Source: Vitrella brassicaformis CCMP3155
Lineage: Eukaryota; Protista; Chromerida
Length of the DNA stretch: 64,000 nucleotides
NCBI GenBank assembly: GCA_001179505.1
Contig: CDMY01000859.1
Coordinates: forward strand, 124,001 to 188,000
Direction: 5' to 3'
The translations under genes and the position numbers were made by a program. Shown here piece by piece: positions 42,539-56,197 of the stretch. A model generated the notes under the pieces. The model did no database searches, had not been told where the DNA came from, and saw only the letters and a list, made by a program, of their open reading frames with translations. Each line of letters begins with the position of its first letter. Within the stretch, counting starts at the first letter, position 1.

Positions 42539-44682
42539 ATGAGGGCAACGATCCCACTTGGTTTGCTAGCGAAGCTTGTTCTTGCAGCTGCACACGCAGC
42601 AGCACTTGAGTGGACTTTATCACTGCAACTCATCGCTCGCCCCTCTGCGTACGTCCCGGTGCCCGCTCCCCACGTGGAAACGAGATTCGTGGCATCATCT
42701 GCCCGCTCTGCTGGCGCCCGCTCATCGGCCCGCTCCTCTTCGTCCGCTCGGCGCGTGACATCGTCATCCCGTCGCGCTTCGCCGTCTTTTCGCTCTTCCC
42801 GGCGTGCCCCCTCCATTCCTCGCCGATTACAGCCTCGCACAAGCAGCGGGCGCCGCCCAACGAGCCGTGGACCGCCACGCATAGACAGCGCAAAGCGACT
42901 AAGGCCATCTGCCAGCCATCCACCCGAGAGGACGGTGCGGCCAAGCGGCACTCGTCGGGCCGAGGTACGCCCAAGGCGGCAGGGCGATCCCCATGAGCAC
43001 GAGCATGAGCGTCCAAGGCTGCCCAGGCAATGGCGATGGGGCAGCCATCACGAGGCCGACCATGACGAGGACGAGATAAGACGGGGGCGTGGTTATTCGG
43101 CAGCGGAGTACCCATCCCCTCTGCACAGCCTCAGGCTGCCTCACATACGGAGAGCAAGGGTCTACACTGACGACGTGACCACATGGCCATCCGAATGGGC
43201 CGGACCGAGAGCTGATCGTCATGACCATGGCGACTCAAGAGACGAGGCTGAGAGGACCGAGTCCTCAAGGAGGGGCTTCTTCCTATCGCACACCGCGGCG
43301 GCTCTGCTGGGTGCAGCGGCTGTCGGTTTTGGGTCACCCATGGCGGCCCAGGCTGTGGTTCAGTTCGATCGAGGTCGTTATGGCGACAAAGAGCTCAAGA
43401 TTGCAACCGTCAACAAGCTCAAGCAAACGGTCGGGCTGGCCATCACTGAGAAGCCGCATCTCGCAGGGCAGCTGGTGCGCCTCGCCATCTCCAATGCCCT
43501 CTCTTACGTTGCTGCCACAGGTGGGAGGCATCACCCACCCTGCACACACACAGGAGTGAGCGCTGTCGCTTTGTTTGCTTTGTGTGTGTGCAGGTGAGGG
43601 TGGTTTGGACGGCAGCATTCGGGAGGAGGTCGACCAGCCCGAGAATGCAGATGTGCGTGAGGCAGTTGAGCTGCTCGAGAGGATCCGCAAGGACATCAAA
43701 CGCACTAACGAGGTCACATTCGCCGACCTCCTCTCGTACGCAGGTAGGTGTTGTTACCTACGGACCCTGCAGCGGATTCATTGCACACGGAATGATTTGT
43801 TTGTCGGAACCAGGCGCTGAGGCTATTGAGCTTGTTGGCGGCCCTCGGTTCTCGCCCCAGCTCGGCCGTGGACAAACGATGGGTCCTTCGAAGACCTCAG
43901 CCCACTTCGACTGGGGCAAGATCGACGCCGCTGAGGCGGTGCGGGCATTCGAGAGAAGCGGAATGTCGCCGAAAGAGGCCGCTGTCATGATAAGTAAGCG
44001 CGCCATGGTGTGCCGACGGACAGGTGCATTCATTCACTCATATGCTCATATGCTGCCTCGTGTGTCAGGCACTGTCGCATGGGTCGATCGTATCACGGCA
44101 AAGGAGGAGGCCCAGCGCGCAGAAAGAAAGAGCGACAATGATGATGATGACGACGATGACATTTTCCAAAGCGTGAGCATGAGACGGAAAGAGAGAAAGA
44201 GCGAGTGCACACCACACGAGTCCATTCCCTCGCCTGTGTGTGTGCAGGAGATCCCCGATACGCGAGTGGGGATGCAAAAGTATGGCGAGACACTGGGAGG
44301 CAAGTCGACCAAACTCACCGCTCAGTACCTCAAGAACCTCCTCAGAGGCGGAAACACCACGGAGCAAGCATCACGGTGAGGTGCAGACATGAGACATACC
44401 CATGGTTGGTATCGTATCAATCATCCTCTGCTCTGCGTGCGCAGGCTGGAGCTGGTGCTGCTCCAGAGCCCTCTGCGCGACTATGTGGAGGTGCGCATCA
44501 CAACGAATAACCGATCGGTTAATTACAACTGTGCACTCGTGCGTTTCCTGCCCCGTGTATGTATTGTATGTGTGCTGCAGGCGTACGCCAAGGACAACAA
44601 GAGCTTCACGAAGGACATAGCGGAGGTGTACCAGAAGCTGTCGCTGGCAGGAGCATCCTACTCGTCCACACTCTTCACGTGA
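42539..44682 (+). CDS. Thylakoid-lumen TL29/APX4-like protein (heme peroxidase fold, catalytically degenerate)
   Basis: Signal-like N-terminus MRATIPLGLLAKLVLAAAHAAA. Twin-Arg lumen signal RRGFF...LLGAAAVGFGSPMAAQA (43268-43354). Peroxidase-fold motifs VRLAISNALSY, GEGGLDGSI, VTFADLLSYAGAEAIELVGGP...QLGR, AYAKDNKSFTKDIAEVYQKLS. Confidence 0.8.
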
Positions 44683-46431: not shown

Positions 46432-47021
46432 CACTGGTGAGCGGGGCCGCTGTCACTTCGTGCCCAGCTGTTTTGTACGGGGCCGGGCGAAGTCAGTTTT
46501 TCTGTCTGTATCGTACCGTCCCCATTTGTGTACCACCTCACCTGTCTGTCTATTTGACTGACTTGAGCTGGGCTGGGCTGGGCTGACCAATCGCACATTG
46601 CCTGCCATGCGTGTCCTCCTCGTGTTGTGTGTGTGTGTGTGTGTGTGTGTGTGGTTGGTTATTTGTTCGTATCGTGAGTGCAGTGAGTGCTCTGCAGTGA
46701 GAGGTCTCTCTTGCACTTCCATCTCCTGGGCTGTGTTTGTCAGTCAGTGATACCTACCTTCCTTGATGTTGCATGACCGTGTGACCGTGTGGCGTGGCAT
46801 GGTCCAGCTGCATCGCATCAAGCCATACATATCTCCTGGTACATGGTGGCACACGTGCATTCTCGAGGATGGGACATCCAAACATATACACAGACACTTA
46901 CAGACAGACAGACAGACCTAAGCACGCATCAATCAGTGCACGCCACGCCCTCCTCGCTATACACAGACAGACAGACACATCCACACAGCCATACATACAC
47001 ACCACCCCCTACATCAGTGAC

Positions 47022-50000
47022 TCAGCGACCCCCCATTACCCCCTGCACCAGCCTCCTCTCCGCCCATCCGCACCACACACCCCACGAACCGCCCCAAGAC
47101 AACACCTGGCCCTTGGCGACAAACGGGCTGAGTGTGGGAGACGACGAGGCCGCGATATAGTAAATGCCGCTCGCCAGCACTAAGAAAGCGGGCACCAGAC
47201 GACCAGCCAGGAGCCAGCCAACGACAGTGTAGTTCTCAGCTTGATCGTCGCCGTCTTGTTCCTGCTGGGCCGCCTCGCACGTCGACCCCTCACGCGTAGA
47301 TGGGTCGCCCCCGTGCTGGCTCTTGAGCTCTCCTGCAGCGCTGTCTTGCTCTGATGCCAATGTCGGCTTGCGGCTTCGTAGCTGGGTGCCGGGTGGGTCA
47401 GCCGATGGCATGACAGACTGCTCAGTGCCATCCGTGTGATGGTCGCCAGAGGGTGGGTGTGTCGCTTCTGATAGAGTGACGTGGCGATGGACAACGGTCG
47501 CGACGGCGAGGAAGGGCAGCGCCATGCCGGCGAAGTACACCAGCAGCAGAGAGACAGCAGCGTGGGTCGAGAGAGGCGGCGGGACCATCATGGAGTGGTG
47601 TGTGGGGAAGGTGTCTTGTATGAGGGCCATGAATGGCCCGATGCACGGCGTCCACGTGAGGCTGGTGGCCAGGCCGCCCAGCACCGCACCAGCCGCAGTA
47701 TCGACAACCACCTGCACACACAGCAGACAGAAAGGAGGGAGGAAAAGAATTGAGGCGTACCGTACCCGACAAGTGTGCATGGTGTTGGTTCTCGTCGGCT
47801 GGTATACCGTGTCGAATTGCATGGATGAGAGGACGAACAAGTCACTCAAGTCCTGGCGGCCCGTCCTGCGGGCGACGTATGCAGCAGTGCCGTAGAGACC
47901 AGGGAGGGAGAGGAGGGTCGCCCACACCAAATACAGCACACCAGCAACCTACAAGCAGACACAACACGAGCAGGCTCGTGATCACTGACTGGTACATTCT
48001 CCCATCCGATGCTTCTCACCTTCAGCCGTATTTCCGATTGCAGCGCGAGCGTCTCATCCACAATGTTCGCCTGGATAGGCTCGGTCGTCAGCTTCGCCCC
48101 CACATAAGCCATGCCCATAGACGCAAACAACAGACTGACGCCAAGCACCTCCGGCCAGCAGTACCGAGCCCACCACACCTCCACACGCCGGCTGCATCTC
48201 GCAATGCGCACCATGCCGGCAACTGCGGCCATGGATGGCACGATGAGGGAGCCGCTGCACGTCGATACGCTACCGAATAGCCCCGCTGCGAATGCGCCGG
48301 CGACCGACACCAACACGTGGATGAGCCAGTGAACACCATAGAACAGCCCGTCTCCCCGCCGCCCAGTGTCTCGCCGCTCAAAGGGCGGCGAAGCGAGGGG
48401 GGATGAGACAGAGTCAGGCTGGCGCCGGCCGTCGAGCAGCAGGGAGGTCATCCAGTGGCTGGATGGGGTCATGAGGGGCGAGATGCTGCTCGTTGTTTCC
48501 AGGACGCTTTCGTAGGTCTGAATGAGGTCGTTCTCGAGAACCAGCTGGGCGGACTTGGCGAGATAGTACCCATCATCCTGACAGGCGAAGGACATGCAAG
48601 GGTCATCGATGTGTCTCATACCTCCCTGCCCTCTCACCAGATATGTCTTTGATTCCTGGAAGAGCCCCAGTGTCATCAGTCCCGCCTCCAGACACTCCGC
48701 CCACATCGGCACACCGCCCTCCTCACCTCCCAGCCAGCCGCCCATGTGGTAAAGAGCCAACCTTACACACGAGTAGGCAGCCATGCCGTTGTCCTCGATC
48801 GTCTTGTGCAGCGAGATGGCGTCGCCAGGCGACGCGAAAAGGGATATGTCCGCATCATGGGGGTTGCGGTCGATGAAGCCGCCGAAGAGAGGGTCGTAGT
48901 TGCGAGACAGGAGGACATGCGCCAGGCGATCGATAAGGGAGAGGAGGGATGGCTTCTCGCGCTGGAAACGGGTGCAGATGTGGAGGTCGGCAGGGGGATG
49001 GTCACCACAGACGCTTTCGAGTGCTTCCAGGGTCTGGATTGCCCCGAGGAGGACAGCAGAGGTGTCTGCCAGGTTGCCGCGGGTGCCTCCCGCCCGGCCG
49101 CCGGCATAGAAGTGATAGACGCCGCGATCGGTCATCAGGTCGCCATCGATAAAGGCCAGAGTGTCGAGAGCCTTCTCGCACCCCACCTGCCGCAACTCCA
49201 TGTCCGCCGAGTGCCGGCAGAGCCAGGCCATCGTGATGACGGCCTCCCCATTGCCATCTGCGTATTTCGTCGGGTCGACTCTCGGTGCCGGCAGGGCCTC
49301 TGATGGCCGTTCCGTGTGTGCGTAATATGCGTCCTCGCCGTTGACGTCCATGCTGCCGAAGAAGCCGCCCGCCGTGCTGTCCCACCACCGTTCGGTGATG
49401 AAGGCCATCGTGCGTGTGACGACGTCATCGAGGGTCGATCTGACGGCGTCTATAGCGTCTCGAGGCGATGTGGCATTGAGAATGGGGGGAATGGACGAGG
49501 TGGGAAGGCCGTCCTTGATGGGCGCGAGAACCTGGAAAAGCAAGCGCCTTTTGTCTTGTCGTCAGCGAGTAATGTTGGTTGATGGTGCATTAAGCTTACA
49601 TGTTGCAAGTGGGCGAATGTTCGCAGCATTTTGACGTTGTCGACGAGCATCTTCTCATAATGCGGCGGGGTCCACTGACGCGTGGTGCCGTACCGATGGA
49701 ATCCGCCCTCTACCGGGTCCCAGAGGCTGCCACACGACAAACGTGACAACAGCAATATCACGTCCACCACCCATCCATGGCTGCGCTGCCCCTGCCTGCC
49801 TTCCGTCCCTGGTTACTTGTACTTGCCCTGTGTCATTTGCTCCATTGTGGTGTACATGCCCATGAGCGTCCCCACAGCTACATCCGCCCACCTCCCCCCG
49901 ACCCTTTCAAACATGTCCACACTGTAGTCCACCGACAGGGCATGGGGGAACTTGGCTCCATTGCCGAAGCCGCCCCACTGCCCGTCGAATAAAGGGGGGA

Positions 50001-50834
50001 TGGACGACGTATACCGTTCGTGGAAGGCCTGCAGGGCCGCATGTGTCGGCAGGGAGAGGGGGCGCGCTGCGGCGGCTGTGAGGGCTTGCTCCAGCTGCTC
50101 GAGTGATGGTCTCTTGTCGCCTGGATGGCCGTCGACGTACCGCTGCCTCCAGTTACCAGCCGTCGTGACATCATTTGCCGCCTGTCCCTCGTGCCGCATC
50201 CTCTCAAAAACGTCGATCGCCTTGAGGAGAATCCCTCGTATCTGCTCGGGCGGCCTCGGCCCGCTCCAGCCATACACTCGCCTCGGCACACCACCCCCTC
50301 CCTCATCCGAGCGTGGCGGCAGCAGAATCACCGACGAAGGCCAGCCGCCCTCGAGCCATTGCTTGGTGAGGTCAGCACGCTTGTCGGCGTCCACATAGAC
50401 GAGATGGAAGTGCTGTGCGAGGGTGTCAGCGACCATTGGGTGGAAGAGGTAGTCTTCGCTCTCGTACACTTCGCACCAGTAGCACCACGCCGGCGCCGTG
50501 AGGAGCAGGAAGATGGGCCGGGGCGAGGCAGCGGCCGCGGCAAACGTGGACGCCCTGCAACCACACGCAGACAACACGCAACATGCATCGTTGCCATGTG
50601 ACGGGTTCGGCCGTGTGTGTGATGTGTTGTAATGGACCTGTAGTCCATCCAGGGCATGCGGCCTTTGAGGGCCTCTGCCTTGCTGTATGTGTACTTGAAC
50701 TCTTCATGGTCGGTCTCGCGCGGGATAGGCGCCTTCACAGCCGCAGCACCCAGCCCCGATGAATCAGAAATGAAAATCAACGACGAGAACAGAAGATGCC
50801 CCACAAGCAGGCTCCGAATCACCCCTCCGGCCAT
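47022..50834 (-). CDS. Fusion: signal peptide - DUF255 thioredoxin (CxxC) - YyaL/SPATA20 alpha/alpha barrel - CcdA/DsbD-type transmembrane domain (3' end approximate)
   Basis: Signal MAGGVIRSLLVGHLLFSSLIFIS. Trx: PIFLLLTAPAWCYWCEVYE...FHLVYVDADKRADL...GGWPSSVILLP. YyaL motifs FDGQWGGFGNGAKFP and WDPVEGGFHRYGTTRQWTPPHYEKMLVDN. CcdA motifs AFAAGLFGSVSTCSGSLIVP, GLATSLTWTPCIGPFMALI and LLVYFAGMALPFL. Confidence 0.8.
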
Positions 50835-50951
50835 CCGGGCAACCACTTCAAAACAACAAGGGTCGCTGTTTTTCCAAGCTCGCACGAGAGGGAAAGGAGG
50901 AGGGATTTTTGTAGCCTTCGGGGCTGTGGTGAGGGCTGGTGGTGTGTCAAG
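50835..50951. promoter_or_regulatory. 117-bp divergent intergenic region (probable bidirectional promoter / overlapping 5'UTRs)
   Basis: Predicted ATGs at 50834 (-) and 50952 (+). Confidence 0.45.
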
Positions 50952-51543
50952 ATGATACGCCTGTCGAAGCCCCGCCTGCTGTTGGCGTCTACGACGCACT
51001 ACCTGCGTCGCAAGTACTGGATCCTGTGTTGGTCGCTGACAGATCCCATGGTGGTGGACTACTTCTTCGAAAAGTTCATGAGATGGCAGTACTACGATGT
51101 GCCGGTCAGCCAGCCAGCCACGGCGGGAGAGAGGAGACACATACCATGGAGCTCGTGTGGTGTGGTGTGTTGTGTTGTGTGCAGTCGTACAACTATATGT
51201 TTGCTGGAGCCCTGGGCATCGGCATCTGCTCGGCCTGCTACTTCAGAGTCTCGTTCTTCTGTCCACAAGTCTCGTAAGTGTTCCTTGATGGCCTCCAGTG
51301 CTTCCCTTCCTGTGCTGCTCTGCTGTCACACTGTGTGTGTGTGTGTGTTTGTGCAGGGTTCGCCGGTCTGACCGGCACAAGGCCCTTCCGGATCAGCACC
51401 GCACCCACGCCCACGCGCTGCCGTACTTCAACCACCACCTCCGGTATGTATGGGCCCACACCGCACGCCACACCAACACACAGCACACACAGCCACACAC
51501 ACACACGTGTGCTGTCTGTCTGTCTGTCGTTGGCCCCCCCACA

Positions 51544-51574
<31 letters not shown>

Positions 51575-52001
51575 GTGTGTGTGTTGTCAGCAACTGGGTG
51601 TTGAAGTGGCGTGCGAGTTTGATCGACAACGAGCCTGACTTCCAGGGTGACCATCCGTGGGGCATCCGTCCGCCCCGCCAGATGGGCTACCAGCGCTGCC
51701 CCTGGTTCCTCCCATTCCCCTACCAGTACATCATGAACGTCCCCCACTACGAGAGAACCACACACGCAGCTATGGAGGAATACTACGAGGTCAGATATAT
51801 ACAGCCATCTAGCAGGGACGGACGGACGGACGGAGGGAGGGAGCACAACAGCCACCCATGTTTGTCTGTGTCTGTCTGTGTGTGTGTGTGTGTGTTTAGC
51901 GCATCGGGTACTACGGCAAGACCAGGTACCGGTTCGGCATCCACCACGACCAGCAGGAGGGCGAGGGCCTCCCGGAGCCCGACGAGGAGGAATTGGAGTG
52001 A
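50952..52001 (+). CDS. NDUFA4/COXFA4-like (MLRQ-type) mitochondrial complex IV accessory subunit, myzozoan ApiCOX-like
   Basis: Presequence-like MIRLSKPRLLLAS. Single TM YMFAGALGIGICSACY followed by FRVSFFCPQV (compare NDUFA4 RL.L.NPDV). Then LPYFNHHLRNWVLKWRASLIDNEPD. Five exons ending ...EPDEEELE* (TGA 51999-52001). The assignment rests on recalled motif similarity only. Confidence 0.5.
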
Positions 52002-53021
52002 TCCACACACACTCACACAGATAGCACACATGGCACACGCGACACACCACACCACGCACACTCGCTCGACCAGAAGTGAGGGAGGGCATGCGTTGATGGG
52101 CGTCGTGTTGGGCCGGTGTGGTGTGCGGCGGTGCTTTCAAAAAGTGTTTGGCTGACCGAAGTGGCTGCCTGGCTGACGTGTAACATGATCTAACTCACTC
52201 ATCCTCTCCTCTCCATCCTCATCTGTCCGATCGTCTGCTCGTCCTGTGTGTGTGCCTGTCTGCGGTTCTGTCCTGGCTGTCTTTTGAACGGGAGAGCTAG
52301 GGTTGCGCCGCAGCGGCAGGCAGAACACAGGCGGGCGAGGGCAGGAGGGCAATGGATGGATGGACCATTCATGTGGTGCTGTTGTATGTATGGTCACTGA
52401 CTGGGGTGTGCTCCACTGCTGTCTGTCTCTCTGTGGGCGAGGAGGAGTTGCGTCGGGTGGCTTGGCTCGCGGTTGTGTCTTCCAGCGTGTGTCAGTGTGG
52501 ACAGCTACACGGCACGGGTGAATCCATCCCTCCGGATGCATCTGTTCCGTGTACGATGGCCGCTCCGACACACACTGGACGACACGAACATGAGACGAGC
52601 AAGCACAAGGTGGTTTCGTACGTGCGGAGAGGGGCGAGAGATCTGTAGCTCTGCCAGAAGCGCGCAGCCGAGAGCTTTTTTGACACACCCACAGCCGCAC
52701 CGCACTACACCTGCTGCTGTAGAGTAGGCGGCTACCGAGAAGACAGCTGACTGACTGACGGATAGGGCGTTGAGCGAATGTGACTCAGAAATCTACCGCC
52801 ACGGCGATGTGCTGTGAAGGCCAATTCATGCAGTAGTATGCCAACGCGTCTCGGAATGATGAGTCATCACCATCGCACCACACAGGCACAAAATCGACAG
52901 ACACATCAGGCAGGCCAAATAGGGTCTGTCTGTCTCCCGGACAAAGCGCTAGCACCTAGAGAAGAGATGACGAAGCACCTTCCTTTCACAGTTGACTGCA
53001 TGCATTGCAATGGTACATCAA

Positions 53022-55810
53022 TCACTTGACGACTTGTTTGGCCAGCGCTGCCTCTGCATCCTCCAGGATGTTCTCATCCACCACCGACCGCTGCAGCGGG
53101 CTGTCACCCGCACCCACAGCCCGCTCCCTAGCATCCCTAGCAGCGGGTGGGGCCCCACTGCTCACCACTGGCTTCGCCTCTGTCCGTTGGATGAACTTGA
53201 CCATCTCATTTGCAACTTCGGTGGGCAGCTCGTCGTGTGGGCAGTGGCCGGCGGGGAGCGGAGCCGTCTCAATCAGGTCGCCCAGCCGCTGAAAGGCCTC
53301 CATCCTCGCTGTGGCGTTGTTGAGCGGATCACTGACACGAAGGAGAGAGGAACAGAGAAAAGGAGCATTTGTGTGTGTGGGGGTTGTGTCATTGGCTGTG
53401 GGCTGGGTTGCTTACAGGAGTCCCTGGAGTATGAGCACAGGTCGACCGAATTTGGCAATCAGCTCGTTGTGCGACCTCTGGGGCGGCAGCTTGGCGCCGC
53501 TCGCAATCACGCCTATCGCCCCTGGATCGGCACTGTCCCTGCTCACACACACACACACACGAACACACGTGTCTCGTTTGAGCACTTCCCTCTCTGGACA
53601 CTCATTGCCTCACCGTAGGATGCAGTCGATGATGCCGTCCTCCACCGCCGTCCCGTTGGTAGGGTAAAGGCGCTTGCAAATGCTGGGCGTCTGTGTCTTG
53701 AGGTAGAGGTACAGCCCCGTGGCAAACAGCTGCAGCAGTCTTTCTGGGGGCGCGCTGTAGGGCGGCAGTGGCTGTGCGTATCCCCGAGTGGCCTCCTCCA
53801 TTGTGCCGCCGAGCGACGCCGTCACGTTGACGTACTCAGCCGGGGTGAAGACGCGACCCGCACTGTTCAGCAAGATGGTGCCTCTGGATTGGATGGGGGA
53901 AACGACAAGCGAGGAGGGTGGGCATATGCGTGTGTGGTTTGTTTCGTGGTCGATGCATGCATACCTGCAGAGGTCTCGTGTGTCCGCGGCGAGGGACTGA
54001 GCCATGTAGCCGCCAATGCTGTTGCCGGCGACGTAGTACGGCCCCCTCACAACCTCCAACACGAAGTCACGCAGCAAAGATTCCCAAGTGTACTGCACCC
54101 ACACAGTGACACGAACGCACTCATGCAGGTCCTCTGCGTGTTCCTCTGATCTCCCCTCCTCTCTCACCTGTGTGAAGGTCAGTCTAGGTTTTTCGCTGTG
54201 GCCAAAGCCAAGCATGTCGATCGCAAAGACCTCATAATGCTGCTGCAGGACGGCCATGGTCTTTCGCCACTGGTCGGCAGAGGCCCCAAAGCCGTGCACC
54301 AGCAGCACTTTCGGCTTGGCAGGGTCGTGCTGTGTAGCGCTTTTGATATATCGGACGAGGAAGCCCCGCCAGTGGTAGTATCTCGTCTCCAGGGGCGTGT
54401 CGCTCCACGACATGCGGGGCAGGCTCGACGGGGGGGAGGGGGAGATGTCCTGATATGCCAGCAGCCGGTGCCACTCCTTCCACTCAACGTACTCCCTCTC
54501 AATGCTGACACGTACAAGACACACAGAATCAGACAAGGTCTTTCGGCGTGCTAGTCCCACCTTCGCAGGGGCAGCTCGACGGCTCGCCGTCGTCTCCTCG
54601 CGCTCGCGATCTCCCTCAGCGACAGGCACCCGAAGCCCACGCTCTCTGCAAAGGCTCTGGTGAAGGCCTCCCCTCGAAAGTAGGCATCCTTGACAGACTT
54701 TGCCGCCATCCGCTGCACGGACCGCTGCTCGAGGGATAGGGTGCTATTGGCGGTACTCTTGATGGCCGCCTTGGCAAAGTCGAGATCACCCATGGTGATG
54801 TACTCGTCCAGCTTGGCCAGAGCAGATGCCTCGCCGAAGGATGAAGCGCTTGTCGACGGCAGGACGTCAATGCTATCGCCATTGGCCAGCGAAGGTGGCC
54901 GGCCAGACGCAAACCCGAACAGGGCACTCTCAGGGGTGAGGGCTATCCGAGCGTTCAGCAGAGTGGCCGCATCGCTTGTGGAGCCTTCGATGCTCTCTTC
55001 AGTGAGCTTCAGAGCGTCCACAAACGAGGGAACCTCCGTCAAAGATCGGTCGATGTCAGCATTGGGGGGTGCAGGGGGAAGCGTGGCCGGCGCCGGCAGG
55101 GGCGGCATCACTTTGCCCTTCCGGAATCTCTTCGCATAGGCCGGAAAGGAAGACGGCAAAGCTGAGGTAGGCGTGGAGAGAGGTCGCAGAGGTGCCGACC
55201 ATGCGTGGAAGGCCGCTCCCTTCTCCTGCGCTGCCCTCATGACCTCATCCTTCCACCTCTGCTGTGCGTACTCAGGGCTGTCATGGAAGAGCACGTCTGT
55301 GATGGCCTTGGACGCGATCAGATCTCCAATCACGGCTTGCGTATCGCCCTGGAAGAGGAACAAGTCGCTGTTGCGCTGACGCAGGGCGTCGCGCAGCTGC
55401 GACAGTGCTGAGAGCAGCAGCTGAAGACGGGTTGGCGAGACCTCGTCCAGCGCCGCTGGGTCAAAGATGAACACGGGAATGCATCTGTCGCTCTGCTGCG
55501 ATGCGGCATAGAGGGCGGGATGGTCATGCACGCGGAGGTCGGTAAGAGAGTAGACAACGAGGGAAGATCCGCCTGTGGCCAGTGCAGGCAGGTCGTTTCT
55601 TGCAGTCACTGCTTGTCTTCCGGCGGCGCTCATCCTCAGCAGCCCTCTCCGCTCCCTCGGCGCCGTAGACAGCGGCGTCTTGGTGGTCGATAGAAAGGCG
55701 GCAGCCTCCTGATCTTGAGCACGAAGCCGCACTGCATCCGACTGCATGTGCATGAGTAACAGAAGCAATGTAACGGCAGCAAGATAGGTCATCGTCAGGC
55801 CTGTTCTCAT
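53022..55810 (-). CDS. Photolyase-like N-terminal domain fused to an alpha/beta hydrolase (At4g25290-type architecture) with signal peptide
   Basis: Signal MTYLAAVTLLLLLMHMQS. Photolyase alpha/beta domain YSLTDLRVHDHPALYAAS...IPVFIFDP...LSQLRDALRQRNSDL, plus FGEASALAKL and GFGCLSLREI. Hydrolase motifs LLVHGFGAS, AIDMLGFGHS, nucleophile GNSIGG and catalytic His GHCPHDE. Confidence 0.85.
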
Positions 55811-56197
55811 CCTGAAATATAGCTGTCTTTCCACCCGAGAAGGCGCGAGCTCAAGCTCGCAAGAACGGTAAAGAGGAACGTCGTGAGAGAAGGATAGGAA
55901 GAGCAGCTATCAGAAGACTAGCTACCTACTTCCGAGCTGATTAGAAGATAGGAATCGCTGCTTCTGAGAGTGCTGCACTGATATCTGCCCGGAGAGTCTG
56001 ACTTGGAGACGCCGCTCAGTGCTTCAACAACACGGGGTTGTTGGGGCTTCCCGCATCGTGAATTCATTCTTATCGAAGGACAAAAAGCCAGCGAAGGCAC
56101 GACAAGAGGCAGAAAGATCCTGTAAGATCAGCTGCACGCACTCACTGGGGAGGCAATGATCAATTAAGTTTTTGTTGTGTTGTGGTGTATCATGCAG

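What the first reader, a model, noticed from the sequence alone, without database searches (positions are those of the whole stretch)
47022..50834. Thioredoxin/YyaL(SPATA20) fused to a CcdA/DsbD membrane electron transporter with a signal peptide: a self-contained trans-membrane reducing system
One reading frame (49543-47846, then two introns) links the WCYWC thioredoxin (50473-50487) and YyaL barrel to a multi-TM domain. That domain carries both CcdA redox cysteines: SVSTC (Cys 48257-48259) and WTPCIGP (47634-47654) (seen). CcdA/DsbD-beta relays electrons from cytosolic thioredoxin across a membrane to an extracytoplasmic Trx-fold partner (established). Here the partner is covalently fused and an N-terminal signal peptide targets the secretory route. 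It could deliver reductant into the ER lumen or a complex-plastid compartment, a function whose eukaryotic carrier is poorly defined. It also hints that YyaL/SPATA20 proteins are redox-controlled (inference).
Basis: partly seen in the sequence, partly recalled or inferred. Interest (0 to 1): 0.85.

Follow-up and report, generated by a model that had tools for sequence, protein, structure and literature searches.

The report
Thioredoxin-YyaL-CcdA fusion gene in Vitrella
An expressed, seven-exon gene of the alga Vitrella brassicaformis joins an exported thioredoxin/YyaL module to a CcdA-type membrane electron carrier; the fusion is real, but it is a divergent eukaryotic copy of a design that is already common, though unstudied, in archaea.

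Summary
On the minus strand, 50834-47022 is one gene of seven exons. All six GT-AG introns appear as spliced joints in RNA-derived contigs. The 1114-aa product is identical to the deposited Vitrella brassicaformis protein CEM35642.1 / A0A0G4GX53.

It has a signal peptide, a DUF255 thioredoxin domain (WCYWC), a YyaL/SPATA20-type barrel, and six TM helices with Cys759 in TM1 and WTPCIGP (Cys908) in TM4.

Pfam and NCBIfam do not detect DsbD/CcdA in this sequence. Other evidence does:
- Its nearest relatives share the whole architecture and pass PF02683. One matches solved CcdA 5VKV at E 9e-27.
- An independent family profile hits TM4-5 at 28 bits (shuffle maximum 4.2).
- Both redox cysteines fall in invariant columns.
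- Three fold searches rank CcdA or DsbD first.

The barrel end, linker, TM1 and TM2 lie in a single exon, so the fusion does not depend on splicing.

The design is not unique. Over a hundred prokaryotic proteins, mostly from DPANN and Nitrosotalea-type archaea, share it, and IMG already labels some 'YyaL/CcdA'. I found no paper on it.

Vitrella's copy sits on a long branch, its TM1 motif has lost its prolines, and its location and activity are untested.

Verdict: new, probably horizontally acquired, eukaryotic member of a known but uncharacterised kind.

The parts
50638..50834 (-). Exon 1. Start ATG at 50834. Signal peptide aa 1-32 (50834-50739): n-region with R7, hydrophobic core aa 8-22, AAA|V cleavage-like site. 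Also the start of the DUF255 domain.
   Evidence: Sequence; hydropathy peak 1.87; spliced contigs X2 record 12 and X7 record 24, with RNA contigs reaching 50851.
49817..50554 (-). Exon 2. DUF255/Thioredox_DsbH thioredoxin domain with WCYWC (50487-50473; Cys90, Cys93) and the start of the YyaL barrel.
   Evidence: PF03190 at 41.5 bits against cut-off 27; intron joints.
49600..49726 (-). Exon 3. Barrel segment with the conserved GGFHRY...HYEKML motif.
   Evidence: Joints 49726/49817 and 49529/49598 in X7 record 23; aligned to P0016.
48638..49531 (-). Exon 4. Main part of the (alpha/alpha)6 YyaL/SPATA20-type barrel.
   Evidence: P0011 against PDB 7TKV, E 1.6e-10; 35% identity to P0016 over aa 43-724.
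48578..48637 (-). Retaining it would add 20 aa.
   Evidence: Joint 'skips 60' in X7 record 23. The deposited protein lacks these residues.
48020..48577 (-). Exon 5. One exon holds the barrel end, the linker, TM1 (48337-48209, Cys759 at 48259-48257) and TM2. This is the physical fusion point.
   Evidence: Continuous ORF. Cys759 falls in an invariant column of 78 sequences. X2 record 11 spans 48229-48405.
47808..47948 (-). Exon 6. TM3 and the cytosolic loop L3-4.
   Evidence: Joints 47946/48018 and 47709/47806 in X1 record 3 and X7 record 22.
47022..47711 (-). Exon 7. TM4 with WTPCIGP (47654-47634, Cys908), TM5, an 85-aa acidic insertion (47486-47232), TM6 (47231-47154), a C-terminal tail with the family's conserved Glu1103, and the stop at 47024-47022.
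   Evidence: Family profile 28.2 bits. All ten best database hits are PF02683 proteins. Alignments A1 and A2.

Best explanation
Shown: this is one nuclear, intron-bearing, transcribed gene of Vitrella brassicaformis. It encodes a 1114-aa protein with a cleavable-looking signal peptide, a DUF255 thioredoxin domain (CYWC), a YyaL/SPATA20-type (alpha/alpha)6 barrel, and a C-terminal six-TM CcdA/DsbD-beta-type domain holding one cysteine in TM1 (Cys759) and one in TM4 (Cys908). It is a divergent member of a large, mostly archaeal family with exactly this fusion.

Inferred mechanism: the signal peptide sends the thioredoxin-barrel module across the membrane, so TM1 enters from the lumenal or outer side, as it does in DsbD. 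Loop charges agree with that orientation. Cytosolic thioredoxin would reduce the Cys759-Cys908 pair in the membrane. That pair would then reduce the CYWC disulfide of the fused thioredoxin domain on the far side, where it plays the part of DsbD-gamma or HCF164. The thioredoxin would in turn act on whatever substrate the attached barrel binds.

There is no room for a plastid transit peptide, so the likely site is the ER, secretory pathway or cell surface. The gene most likely entered a eukaryotic lineage by horizontal transfer from a prokaryote and has since diverged strongly.
For: Gene model and expression: six GT-AG introns, each seen as a joint in RNA-derived contigs. The translation is identical to CEM35642.1. 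GC content is like the flanks.

Fusion: the barrel end, TM1 and TM2 are in one exon and one ORF.

Thioredoxin and barrel: PF03190 at 41.5 bits; 7TKV at E 1.6e-10.

CcdA domain:
- All ten best hits of exon 7 among 5.8 billion proteins are PF02683 proteins.
- The language-model search names DsbD_TM/DsbD_2 in 48 of 60 hits.
- Relatives found through the barrel alone (P0012, P0016, P0017, P0019, P0021, P0024, P0045) carry PF02683 above its cut-off.
- P0017 matches solved CcdA 5VKV at E 9e-27.
- A family C-domain profile built without Vitrella scores TM4-5 at 28.2 bits against a shuffle maximum of 4.2.
- BLASTP of the C-domains is colinear from TM1 to TM5 with both cysteines aligned, E 4e-6.
- Cys759 and Cys908 are invariant columns in 78 sequences.
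- The AF2 model's best PDB match is 5VKV in both Foldseek and VIA-align (Z 8.5, 218 of 224 residues). The best Atlas match is DsbD, TM 0.46 against 0.25 for the next.

Family traits shared by Vitrella: CYWC (118 of 131 members), an N-terminal hydrophobic segment (124 of 131), and a C-terminal Glu.

Topology: K+R/D+E counts are 5/1 in loop 1-2, 1/4 in loop 2-3 and 3/3 in loop 3-4. DsbD's periplasmic N-domain also precedes TM1 (PMC3322552).

Origin: the gene is nested among archaea-labelled proteins and pairs with a EukProt transcript (SH-aLRT 94). Its nearest neighbours lie on compact prokaryotic contigs.
Against: - Pfam PF02683/PF13386 and NCBIfam do not reach significance on this protein, whole or in pieces. 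The best is NF001419 at E 0.28.
- phmmer against 5VKV gives only E 0.11.
- The TM1-3 half is not significant against the independent family profile: 4.1 bits, while shuffles reach 13.8.
- The TM1 motif reads STCSGS..VP where the family has SPC(T/S)LP..P. Pro758, Leu761, Pro762 and Pro765 are lost, and only 24 of 45 highly conserved columns are kept.
- The branch is very long (2.4-3.1 changes per site), and a bacterial relative (P0013) has lost both cysteines. Loss of function is therefore possible in this family.
- The AF2 model is of middling confidence (pLDDT 69.6), and fold scores are modest for helical bundles.
- No single RNA contig spans both halves. Contigs of three runs end at 48379-48405.
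- There are no data on localisation, redox state or substrate.
Confidence: 0.62

Rival explanations
1. Relic membrane anchor. The C-terminal domain descends from CcdA but no longer moves electrons in Vitrella. It only tethers an exported YyaL-like enzyme to the membrane, and the thioredoxin domain is reduced by another route or is structural.
For: The TM1 half-site has lost three nearly invariant prolines/leucine. TM1-3 is not significant against the family profile. Pfam fails. The branch is very long. Insertions of 12 and about 70 aa sit in loops. The relative P0013 shows that the family can lose both cysteines while keeping the TM domain.
Against: Both redox cysteines, the full WTPCIGP motif and the TM5 LL..Y..G...P motif are retained. 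The CYWC partner site is also kept. The gene is spliced and expressed.
Confidence: 0.22
2. Plastid thiol pathway. The protein is targeted to the complex plastid (thylakoid or periplastid space) and acts like CCDA plus HCF164/CCS5 in cytochrome c/f maturation.
For: In eukaryotes CcdA is known from plastids (PMC3842002; PMC5526843, listed). Vitrella is photosynthetic. A signal peptide is the first half of a bipartite plastid leader.
Against: Only about 8 residues lie between the predicted cleavage site (aa 32) and the start of the conserved domain (profile position 18 at aa 58). The stretch aa 34-58 is acidic, so there is no room for a transit peptide. The closest relatives are DPANN-type archaeal fusions, not cyanobacterial or plastid CcdA. 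Whether Vitrella has a canonical plastid CCDA was not tested.
Confidence: 0.08
3. Two products. An internal transcript start near 48390-48405 yields a separate TM-domain protein, so the fusion is only apparent.
For: RNA contigs of three runs end within 48379-48405. In X7 the 3' contig is deeper (32) than the 5' contig (11.2).
Against: The frame is open across the site inside a single exon. X2 record 11 (48229-48405) overlaps X7 record 23 (from 48379). The first in-frame Met downstream is Met768, after Cys759, so a stand-alone product would lack the TM1 redox site. A 5' transcript ending there would have no stop codon. The same fusion is the rule in over 100 homologues. Poly-A libraries are commonly 3'-biased.
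Confidence: 0.05
4. Prokaryotic contaminant or assembly artefact in the Vitrella assembly.
For: All close homologues but one are prokaryotic.
Against: There are six spliceosomal introns, removed in RNA. GC content is host-like. Eukaryotic neighbour genes lie on the same 244-kb contig. The stretch is found whole in several independent runs.
Confidence: 0.01

Closest known systems
Archaeal/prokaryotic 'YyaL (SSP411 family)/cytochrome c biogenesis protein CcdA' fusion proteins, about 820-860 aa (e.g. Candidatus Pacearchaeota and Woesearchaeota 'DUF255 domain-containing protein', Nitrosotalea and Undinarchaeales 'CcdA'; P0017, P0065, P0069, P0147, P0168)
   Same: The same colinear architecture: an N-terminal hydrophobic segment, a CYWC DUF255 thioredoxin, the barrel, six-TM CcdA and a C-terminal Glu-containing helix. 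The TM4 motif WTPC(I/V)GP is also the same.
   Different: Vitrella's protein is eukaryotic and intron-bearing, and it is 260-290 aa longer through loop insertions. It shares at most 39% identity. Its TM1 SPCxLP motif is degenerate, and it falls below Pfam's DsbD_TM threshold. None of these proteins has been characterised in the literature I searched.
CcdA (Thermus thermophilus, PDB 5VKV; plant and algal thylakoid CCDA working with HCF164/CCS5)
   Same: A six-TM 3+3 domain with one redox cysteine in TM1 and one in TM4. It is the best structural match. The logic is also the same: cytoplasmic or stromal thioredoxin, then membrane cysteines, then a thioredoxin-fold acceptor on the far side (PMC3322552, PMC3842002).
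   Different: CcdA stands alone and its thioredoxin-fold partner is a separate protein. Here the partner is fused at the N-terminus and carries a barrel domain. Direct sequence similarity to 5VKV is marginal (E 0.11).
E. coli DsbD and ScsB (alpha-beta-gamma electron hubs)
   Same: A membrane DsbD_TM core covalently linked to extracytoplasmic redox domains. An exported N-terminal domain precedes TM1 (PMC3322552). DsbD is the top hit in the ESM Atlas fold search.
   Different: DsbD and ScsB have eight TM helices, an Ig-like or other alpha domain at the N-terminus and a C-terminal thioredoxin gamma domain. Here there are six TM helices, no alpha or gamma domain, and the thioredoxin (DUF255 type) is N-terminal with a barrel.
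YyaL/SPATA20 (SSP411) family; PDB 7TKV 'Thioredox_DsbH domain-containing protein', 3IRA
   Same: A DUF255 thioredoxin domain followed by an (alpha/alpha)6 barrel. PF03190 passes its cut-off, and 7TKV matches at E 1.6e-10.
   Different: Typical YyaL proteins are soluble, lack the membrane domain and often carry CHWC rather than CYWC. Their function is unknown.
Chlamydia DsbH (founder of Pfam Thioredox_DsbH; PDB 2JU5)
   Same: A DUF255-type thioredoxin that works outside the cytoplasm as a reductase. That it is periplasmic and reducing is my recollection of the DsbH literature and was not checked here. Weak matches: NF043050 at E 0.022, 2JU5 at E 0.26 and E 0.001 for P0017.
   Different: DsbH is a small stand-alone domain with no barrel and no membrane module.
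LTO1 (thylakoid VKOR-thioredoxin fusion)
   Same: [quoted passage not shown]
   Different: LTO1 uses a different membrane fold (VKOR) and works in the opposite direction (oxidation).

Membership tests
CcdA/DsbD_TM superfamily (PF02683/PF13386) | Significant match of the sequence itself to the curated family profile | tested here: not met
   There is no PF02683 or PF13386 hit on P0011 or its exon pieces even at E 10. The NCBIfam DsbD model NF001419 gives E 0.28. A custom profile of 130 fused-family C-domains gives 20.1 bits for the whole protein and 28.2 bits for TM4-5.
CcdA/DsbD_TM superfamily (PF02683/PF13386) | Six TM helices (3+3) with one redox cysteine in TM1 and one in TM4 | tested here: met
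   Six hydropathy peaks, and AF2 helices in the same places. Cys759 and Cys908 fall in the two invariant Cys columns of a 78-sequence alignment.
CcdA/DsbD_TM superfamily (PF02683/PF13386) | Proline-containing motifs around both cysteines (SPCxLP in TM1, WTPCxGP in TM4) | tested here: inconclusive
   The TM4 motif is intact (WTPCIGP). The TM1 motif is degenerate (STCSGS), with Pro758, Leu761, Pro762 and Pro765 of the consensus missing.
CcdA/DsbD_TM superfamily (PF02683/PF13386) | Fold like solved CcdA | tested here: met
   5VKV ranks first of 350,542 chains in Foldseek, but only at E 0.45 and TMt 0.38. It also ranks first of 48,161 chains in VIA-align, with Z 8.5 and 218 of 224 residues aligned. 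DsbD ranks first in the Atlas search, TM 0.46. The scores are modest and the model pLDDT is 69.6.
CcdA/DsbD_TM superfamily (PF02683/PF13386) | Thioredoxin-driven transmembrane electron transfer | not testable with these tools
   This needs redox-state gels, complementation or proteoliposome assays.
YyaL/SPATA20 (DUF255 thioredoxin + six-hairpin barrel) | PF03190 above the gathering score, with a CxxC site | tested here: met
   41.5 bits against cut-off 27, over aa 58-146. CYWC is at aa 90-93.
YyaL/SPATA20 (DUF255 thioredoxin + six-hairpin barrel) | Barrel domain homologous to a solved YyaL-type protein | tested here: met
   7TKV at E 1.6e-10 in two stretches. Relatives also hit the GlcNAc_2-epim, GH88 and GH76 barrel families. 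The barrel of P0011 was not modelled on its own.
Fused YyaL-CcdA family (mostly archaeal) | Colinear signal/anchor, CYWC thioredoxin, barrel, six-TM CcdA and C-terminal helix, with full-length homology to members | tested here: met
   P0011 against P0016: 35% identity over aa 43-724, E 3e-119. The C-domain against P0017 is colinear, E 4e-6. CYWC occurs in 118 of 131 members and an N-terminal hydrophobic segment in 124 of 131. Glu1103 is conserved. The protein is nested inside the family in two trees.
DsbD proper (alpha-beta-gamma) | Eight TM helices, an N-terminal Ig-like alpha domain (PF11412) and a C-terminal thioredoxin gamma domain | tested here: not met
   There are six TM helices, no PF11412 hit and no C-terminal thioredoxin.
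Plastid CCDA/HCF164 pathway | Bipartite plastid leader (signal peptide plus transit peptide) and cyanobacterial ancestry | tested here: inconclusive
   Inspection leaves no room for a transit peptide, and the relatives are archaeal-type rather than cyanobacterial. No targeting predictor or localisation experiment was available.

The most novel reading that the evidence does not exclude
This is the first CcdA/DsbD-type transmembrane electron carrier working outside a plastid in a eukaryote. It would be a prokaryote-derived module in the ER, secretory pathway or plasma membrane that carries cytosolic thioredoxin electrons to a fused lumenal thioredoxin/YyaL enzyme. That would give a natural, self-contained answer to how reductant can cross a secretory-pathway membrane. 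It would also serve as a Rosetta-stone clue that the enigmatic YyaL/SPATA20 family are thiol-dependent extracytoplasmic enzymes fed by DsbD-like carriers.
Probability: 0.33. Interest if true: 0.65.

Novelty: new member of a known kind. Interest (0 to 1): 0.45.

Why it matters
How reducing power crosses the membranes of the secretory pathway is still open. In mammals the cytosolic thioredoxin reductase pathway acts through an unidentified membrane protein (PMC7197872). A eukaryotic, signal-peptide-bearing CcdA fusion would show one way this can be done. It would also be a simple test object, because carrier and acceptor sit in one chain.

The fusion family as a whole, with hundreds of archaeal members, links the uncharacterised YyaL/SPATA20 fold to a defined electron supply. 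That link is a testable clue to the fold's function.

The limits are clear. The gene appears confined to Vitrella and one other eukaryotic transcriptome, so it cannot be the general eukaryotic carrier. The design is already visible in automatic annotation. Vitrella's copy may be partly degenerate.

Tried and rejected
- Pfam and NCBIfam scans of single exons and of the whole protein for DsbD/CcdA gave nothing significant. I did not take this as refutation, because homologues pass the same profiles.
- My first five-intron model (1134 aa) was wrong. RNA joints revealed a sixth, in-frame 60-nt intron, and the database protein confirmed the corrected model.
- The profile built from the ten CcdA hits of exon 7 is biased toward TM4-5, because those hits were chosen by that region. 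I replaced it with a profile of family members found through the barrel or through P0017. With that profile TM1-3 is not significant on its own.
- Separate transcripts, prokaryotic contamination and plastid targeting were considered and are rated low (see the rival explanations).
- Literature searches for a YyaL/SPATA20-CcdA link found nothing.
- Searches for the TSA prefix GILJ, to identify the organism of P0016, found nothing.
- A search for the DsbD proline mutagenesis paper found nothing readable, so the functional weight of the lost TM1 prolines rests on conservation alone.
- Gene neighbourhoods of five prokaryotic homologues show no conserved operon.
- Earlier scan notes hold nothing on CcdA or DsbD in this genome.
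Full report
**1. What is in the sequence**

On the minus strand, an ATG at 50834 opens a gene that ends at a TGA at 47024-47022. Reading across GT..AG boundaries gave a first model.

Laying public runs on 46900-51000 showed spliced contigs in three runs (X1, X2, X7). Their joints match the five introns I had predicted and add a sixth, an in-frame 60-nt intron at 48637-48578.

The seven exons are:
- 50834-50638
- 50554-49817
- 49726-49600
- 49531-48638
- 48577-48020
- 47948-47808
- 47711-47022

The 1114-aa translation is identical to protein P0011, returned by an exhaustive HMMER search. That protein is CEM35642.1 / UniRef A0A0G4GX53 of Vitrella brassicaformis CCMP3155, named only 'Spermatogenesis-associated protein 20-like TRX domain-containing protein'. 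An earlier scan note on this window had guessed an alveolate alga.

Run X3 holds the unspliced stretch in one contig and is probably the source DNA.

**2. Anatomy**

- aa 1-32 look like a classical signal peptide: Arg7, a hydrophobic core, and an AAA|V cleavage-like site.
- aa 58-146 match Pfam Thioredox_DsbH/DUF255 at 41.5 bits against a cut-off of 27. The CYWC site is at aa 90-93.
- The following roughly 550 residues are a YyaL-type barrel. PDB 7TKV matches at E 1.6e-10. Identity to P0016 is 35% over aa 43-724, E 3e-119.
- From aa 733 there are six hydrophobic helices. TM1 holds Cys759 and TM4 holds WTPCIGP (Cys908). An 85-aa acidic insertion lies between TM5 and TM6.

Exon 5 alone (48577-48020) carries the end of the barrel, the linker, TM1 and TM2. 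The fusion is therefore a property of one exon, not of a splice choice.

**3. Is the membrane domain CcdA/DsbD?**

Curated profiles say no for this sequence. There is no PF02683 or PF13386 hit on the whole protein or on pieces, and the NCBIfam DsbD model gives E 0.28. phmmer against solved CcdA 5VKV gives E 0.11.

Five other lines of evidence say yes.

(a) The ten best matches to exon 7 among 5.8 billion proteins are all PF02683 proteins, though weakly. A language-model search returns DsbD_TM/DsbD_2 clusters for 48 of 60 hits.

(b) The exhaustive search used the 565-aa ORF, whose matched stretches lay almost wholly in its barrel part. It found only 42 relatives in 1.84 billion representatives. 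The full-length ones (P0016, P0017, P0019, P0021, P0024, P0045, and partial P0012) all carry DUF255, the barrel and DsbD_TM above Pfam's cut-off, at 32-72 bits. P0017's C-domain matches 5VKV over its whole length at E 9e-27.

(c) I built a profile from 130 family C-domains that were not chosen by likeness to Vitrella's TM region. It scores Vitrella's TM4-5 at 28.2 bits, while 300 shuffles reach at most 4.2. BLASTP of the C-domains of P0011 and P0017 gives one colinear alignment from TM1 to TM5 with both cysteines aligned, E 4e-6.

(d) In a 78-sequence alignment the only invariant cysteines are the columns of Cys759 and Cys908.

(e) An AlphaFold model of aa 725-1114 (pLDDT 69.6) has CcdA 5VKV as its best PDB match in two searches. 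Foldseek gives E 0.45 and rank 1 of 350,542 chains. VIA-align gives Z 8.5 with 218 of 224 residues aligned, rank 1 of 48,161 chains. DsbD is the best ESM Atlas match, TM 0.46 against 0.25 for the next.

I conclude that the domain is a CcdA-type module by descent and by fold.

Its first half is degenerate. TM1-3 alone is not significant against the independent profile (4.1 bits). The near-invariant SPC(T/S)LP..P motif reads STCSGS..VP. Vitrella keeps 24 of 45 columns that are at least 85% conserved in the family.

**4. The fusion is a family, not a one-off**

A search with P0017 returned 2483 proteins at E below 1e-10. All but one of the 120 best listed carry PF03190 plus PF02683 and are about 755-1006 aa long; the exception (P0173, 755 aa) shows only the DsbD domains.

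The named ones come from Candidatus Pacearchaeota, Woesearchaeota, Nanoarchaeota, Undinarchaeales and Nitrosotalea. IMG already labels several 'uncharacterized protein YyaL (SSP411 family)/cytochrome c biogenesis protein CcdA' (the same set appears for P0016).

Loci around five members are compact prokaryotic or archaeal DNA with no conserved operon.

Family traits are these:
- CYWC in 118 of 131 members.
- An N-terminal hydrophobic segment in 124 of 131.
- SPC(T/S)LP and WTPC(V/I)GP.
- A conserved C-terminal Glu.

Vitrella has all of these except the TM1 motif. I found no paper describing the fusion.

**5. Origin**

Nothing in the libraries is closer than about 39% identity.

In two quick maximum-likelihood trees Vitrella sits on a very long branch (2.4-3.1 changes per site), inside the fused family. 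In the second tree it pairs with P0016, a EukProt transcript (TSA GILJ01013130, organism not identified), with SH-aLRT 94. That pair lies within a starred group otherwise made of archaea-labelled and metagenomic proteins.

With six spliced introns and host-like GC, the simplest reading is an old horizontal acquisition by a eukaryotic lineage followed by fast divergence. Long-branch attraction cannot be excluded. The donor is not resolved.

**6. How it most likely works (inference)**

In DsbD and ScsB an exported N-terminal domain precedes TM1 of the membrane core. The core's two cysteines take electrons from cytoplasmic thioredoxin and give them to a thioredoxin-fold domain outside (PMC3322552).

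Here a signal peptide precedes the thioredoxin-barrel module. Loop charges fit an N-out topology: loop 1-2 has K+R/D+E of 5/1, loop 2-3 has 1/4, and loop 3-4 has 3/3.

The relay would therefore run in four steps:
1. Cytosolic thioredoxin reduces the Cys759/Cys908 pair.
2. That pair reduces CYWC (Cys90/Cys93).
3. The thioredoxin domain acts on a substrate held by the barrel.
4. The substrate itself is unknown.

Only about 8 residues lie between the predicted signal cleavage site and the conserved domain, and they are acidic. I therefore favour the ER, secretory pathway or cell surface over the plastid.

**7. Open points**

No single RNA contig joins both halves. Contigs of three runs end at 48379-48405, and X7 depth differs on the two sides (32 against 11.2). 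The contigs do overlap, since X2 record 11 runs 48229-48405 and X7 record 23 starts at 48379. The frame is open, and the first downstream in-frame Met (Met768) lies after Cys759. A separate CcdA product is therefore unlikely, but long-read cDNA should settle it.

The degenerate TM1 motif, the long branch and the Cys-less bacterial relative P0013 keep a 'relic anchor' reading alive.

**8. Verdict**

This is a new, probably horizontally acquired and divergent eukaryotic member of an existing, automatically annotated but experimentally unstudied family of YyaL-CcdA fusion proteins.

It is of moderate interest as a possible non-plastid eukaryotic transmembrane reductase, in the context of PMC7197872, and as a functional clue for YyaL/SPATA20.

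Noticed in passing
window 48578-48637 (-): An in-frame 60-nt GT-AG intron lies inside what reads as one long ORF. Retaining it would insert 20 aa including two cysteines. Only the spliced form was seen in RNA contigs (X7 record 23).
   Followed up: yes
window 48379-48405: RNA-derived contigs from three runs all end here, in the linker just upstream of TM1. Depth in X7 is 32 on the 3' side and 11.2 on the 5' side. The cause could be 3' bias, a coverage hole or an internal 5' end.
   Followed up: partly
window 46900-47036: (GACA)n/(CA)n-type simple repeats just past the stop codon attract very deep, multi-copy contigs (depth 240-780) with many loose ends. Similar repeats recur at 51240-52100.
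   Followed up: no
window 50890-51000 and beyond: A much more highly covered transcript contig (X1 record 6, depth 193; X2 record 13) begins about 55-75 nt upstream of this gene's ATG. The intergenic space and 5' UTR are therefore very short.
   Followed up: no
window 53610-55834 (-) and 43582-44379 (+): Neighbouring ORFs match alpha/beta hydrolase (PF00561, E 1.7e-13) and DNA photolyase (PF00875, E 6e-29). One also hits haem peroxidase weakly (PF00141, E 0.0017, below cut-off). There is no functional link to the finding.
   Followed up: partly
P0013 / L001:8001-10451: A bacterial homologue (816 aa, beside molybdopterin oxidoreductase and multihaem cytochrome genes) keeps the thioredoxin, barrel and TM architecture. 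It has lost both membrane cysteines and falls below the Pfam DsbD threshold.
   Followed up: partly
L002 and L004 (loci of P0024 and P0069): A DoxX/MauE-family membrane protein gene lies next to or near the fusion gene in two prokaryotic loci. In L002 a thioredoxin gene and a MerR regulator are also nearby. This arrangement is absent from the other loci examined (L001, L003, L005, L006).
   Followed up: no
fused family: The exported, fused family almost always has CYWC in the DUF255 site (118 of 131), while unfused relatives in the hit lists often have CHWC. The fused family also shares a C-terminal helix with a conserved Glu that plain CcdA lacks.
   Followed up: partly
P0016 (EukProt, TSA GILJ01013130.1): This is the only other eukaryote-sourced member found. 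It is 948 aa, has intact SPCSLP and WTPCVGP motifs, and carries a Gln/Ala-rich insertion in loop 1-2. It pairs with Vitrella in the tree. Its organism could not be identified here.
   Followed up: partly
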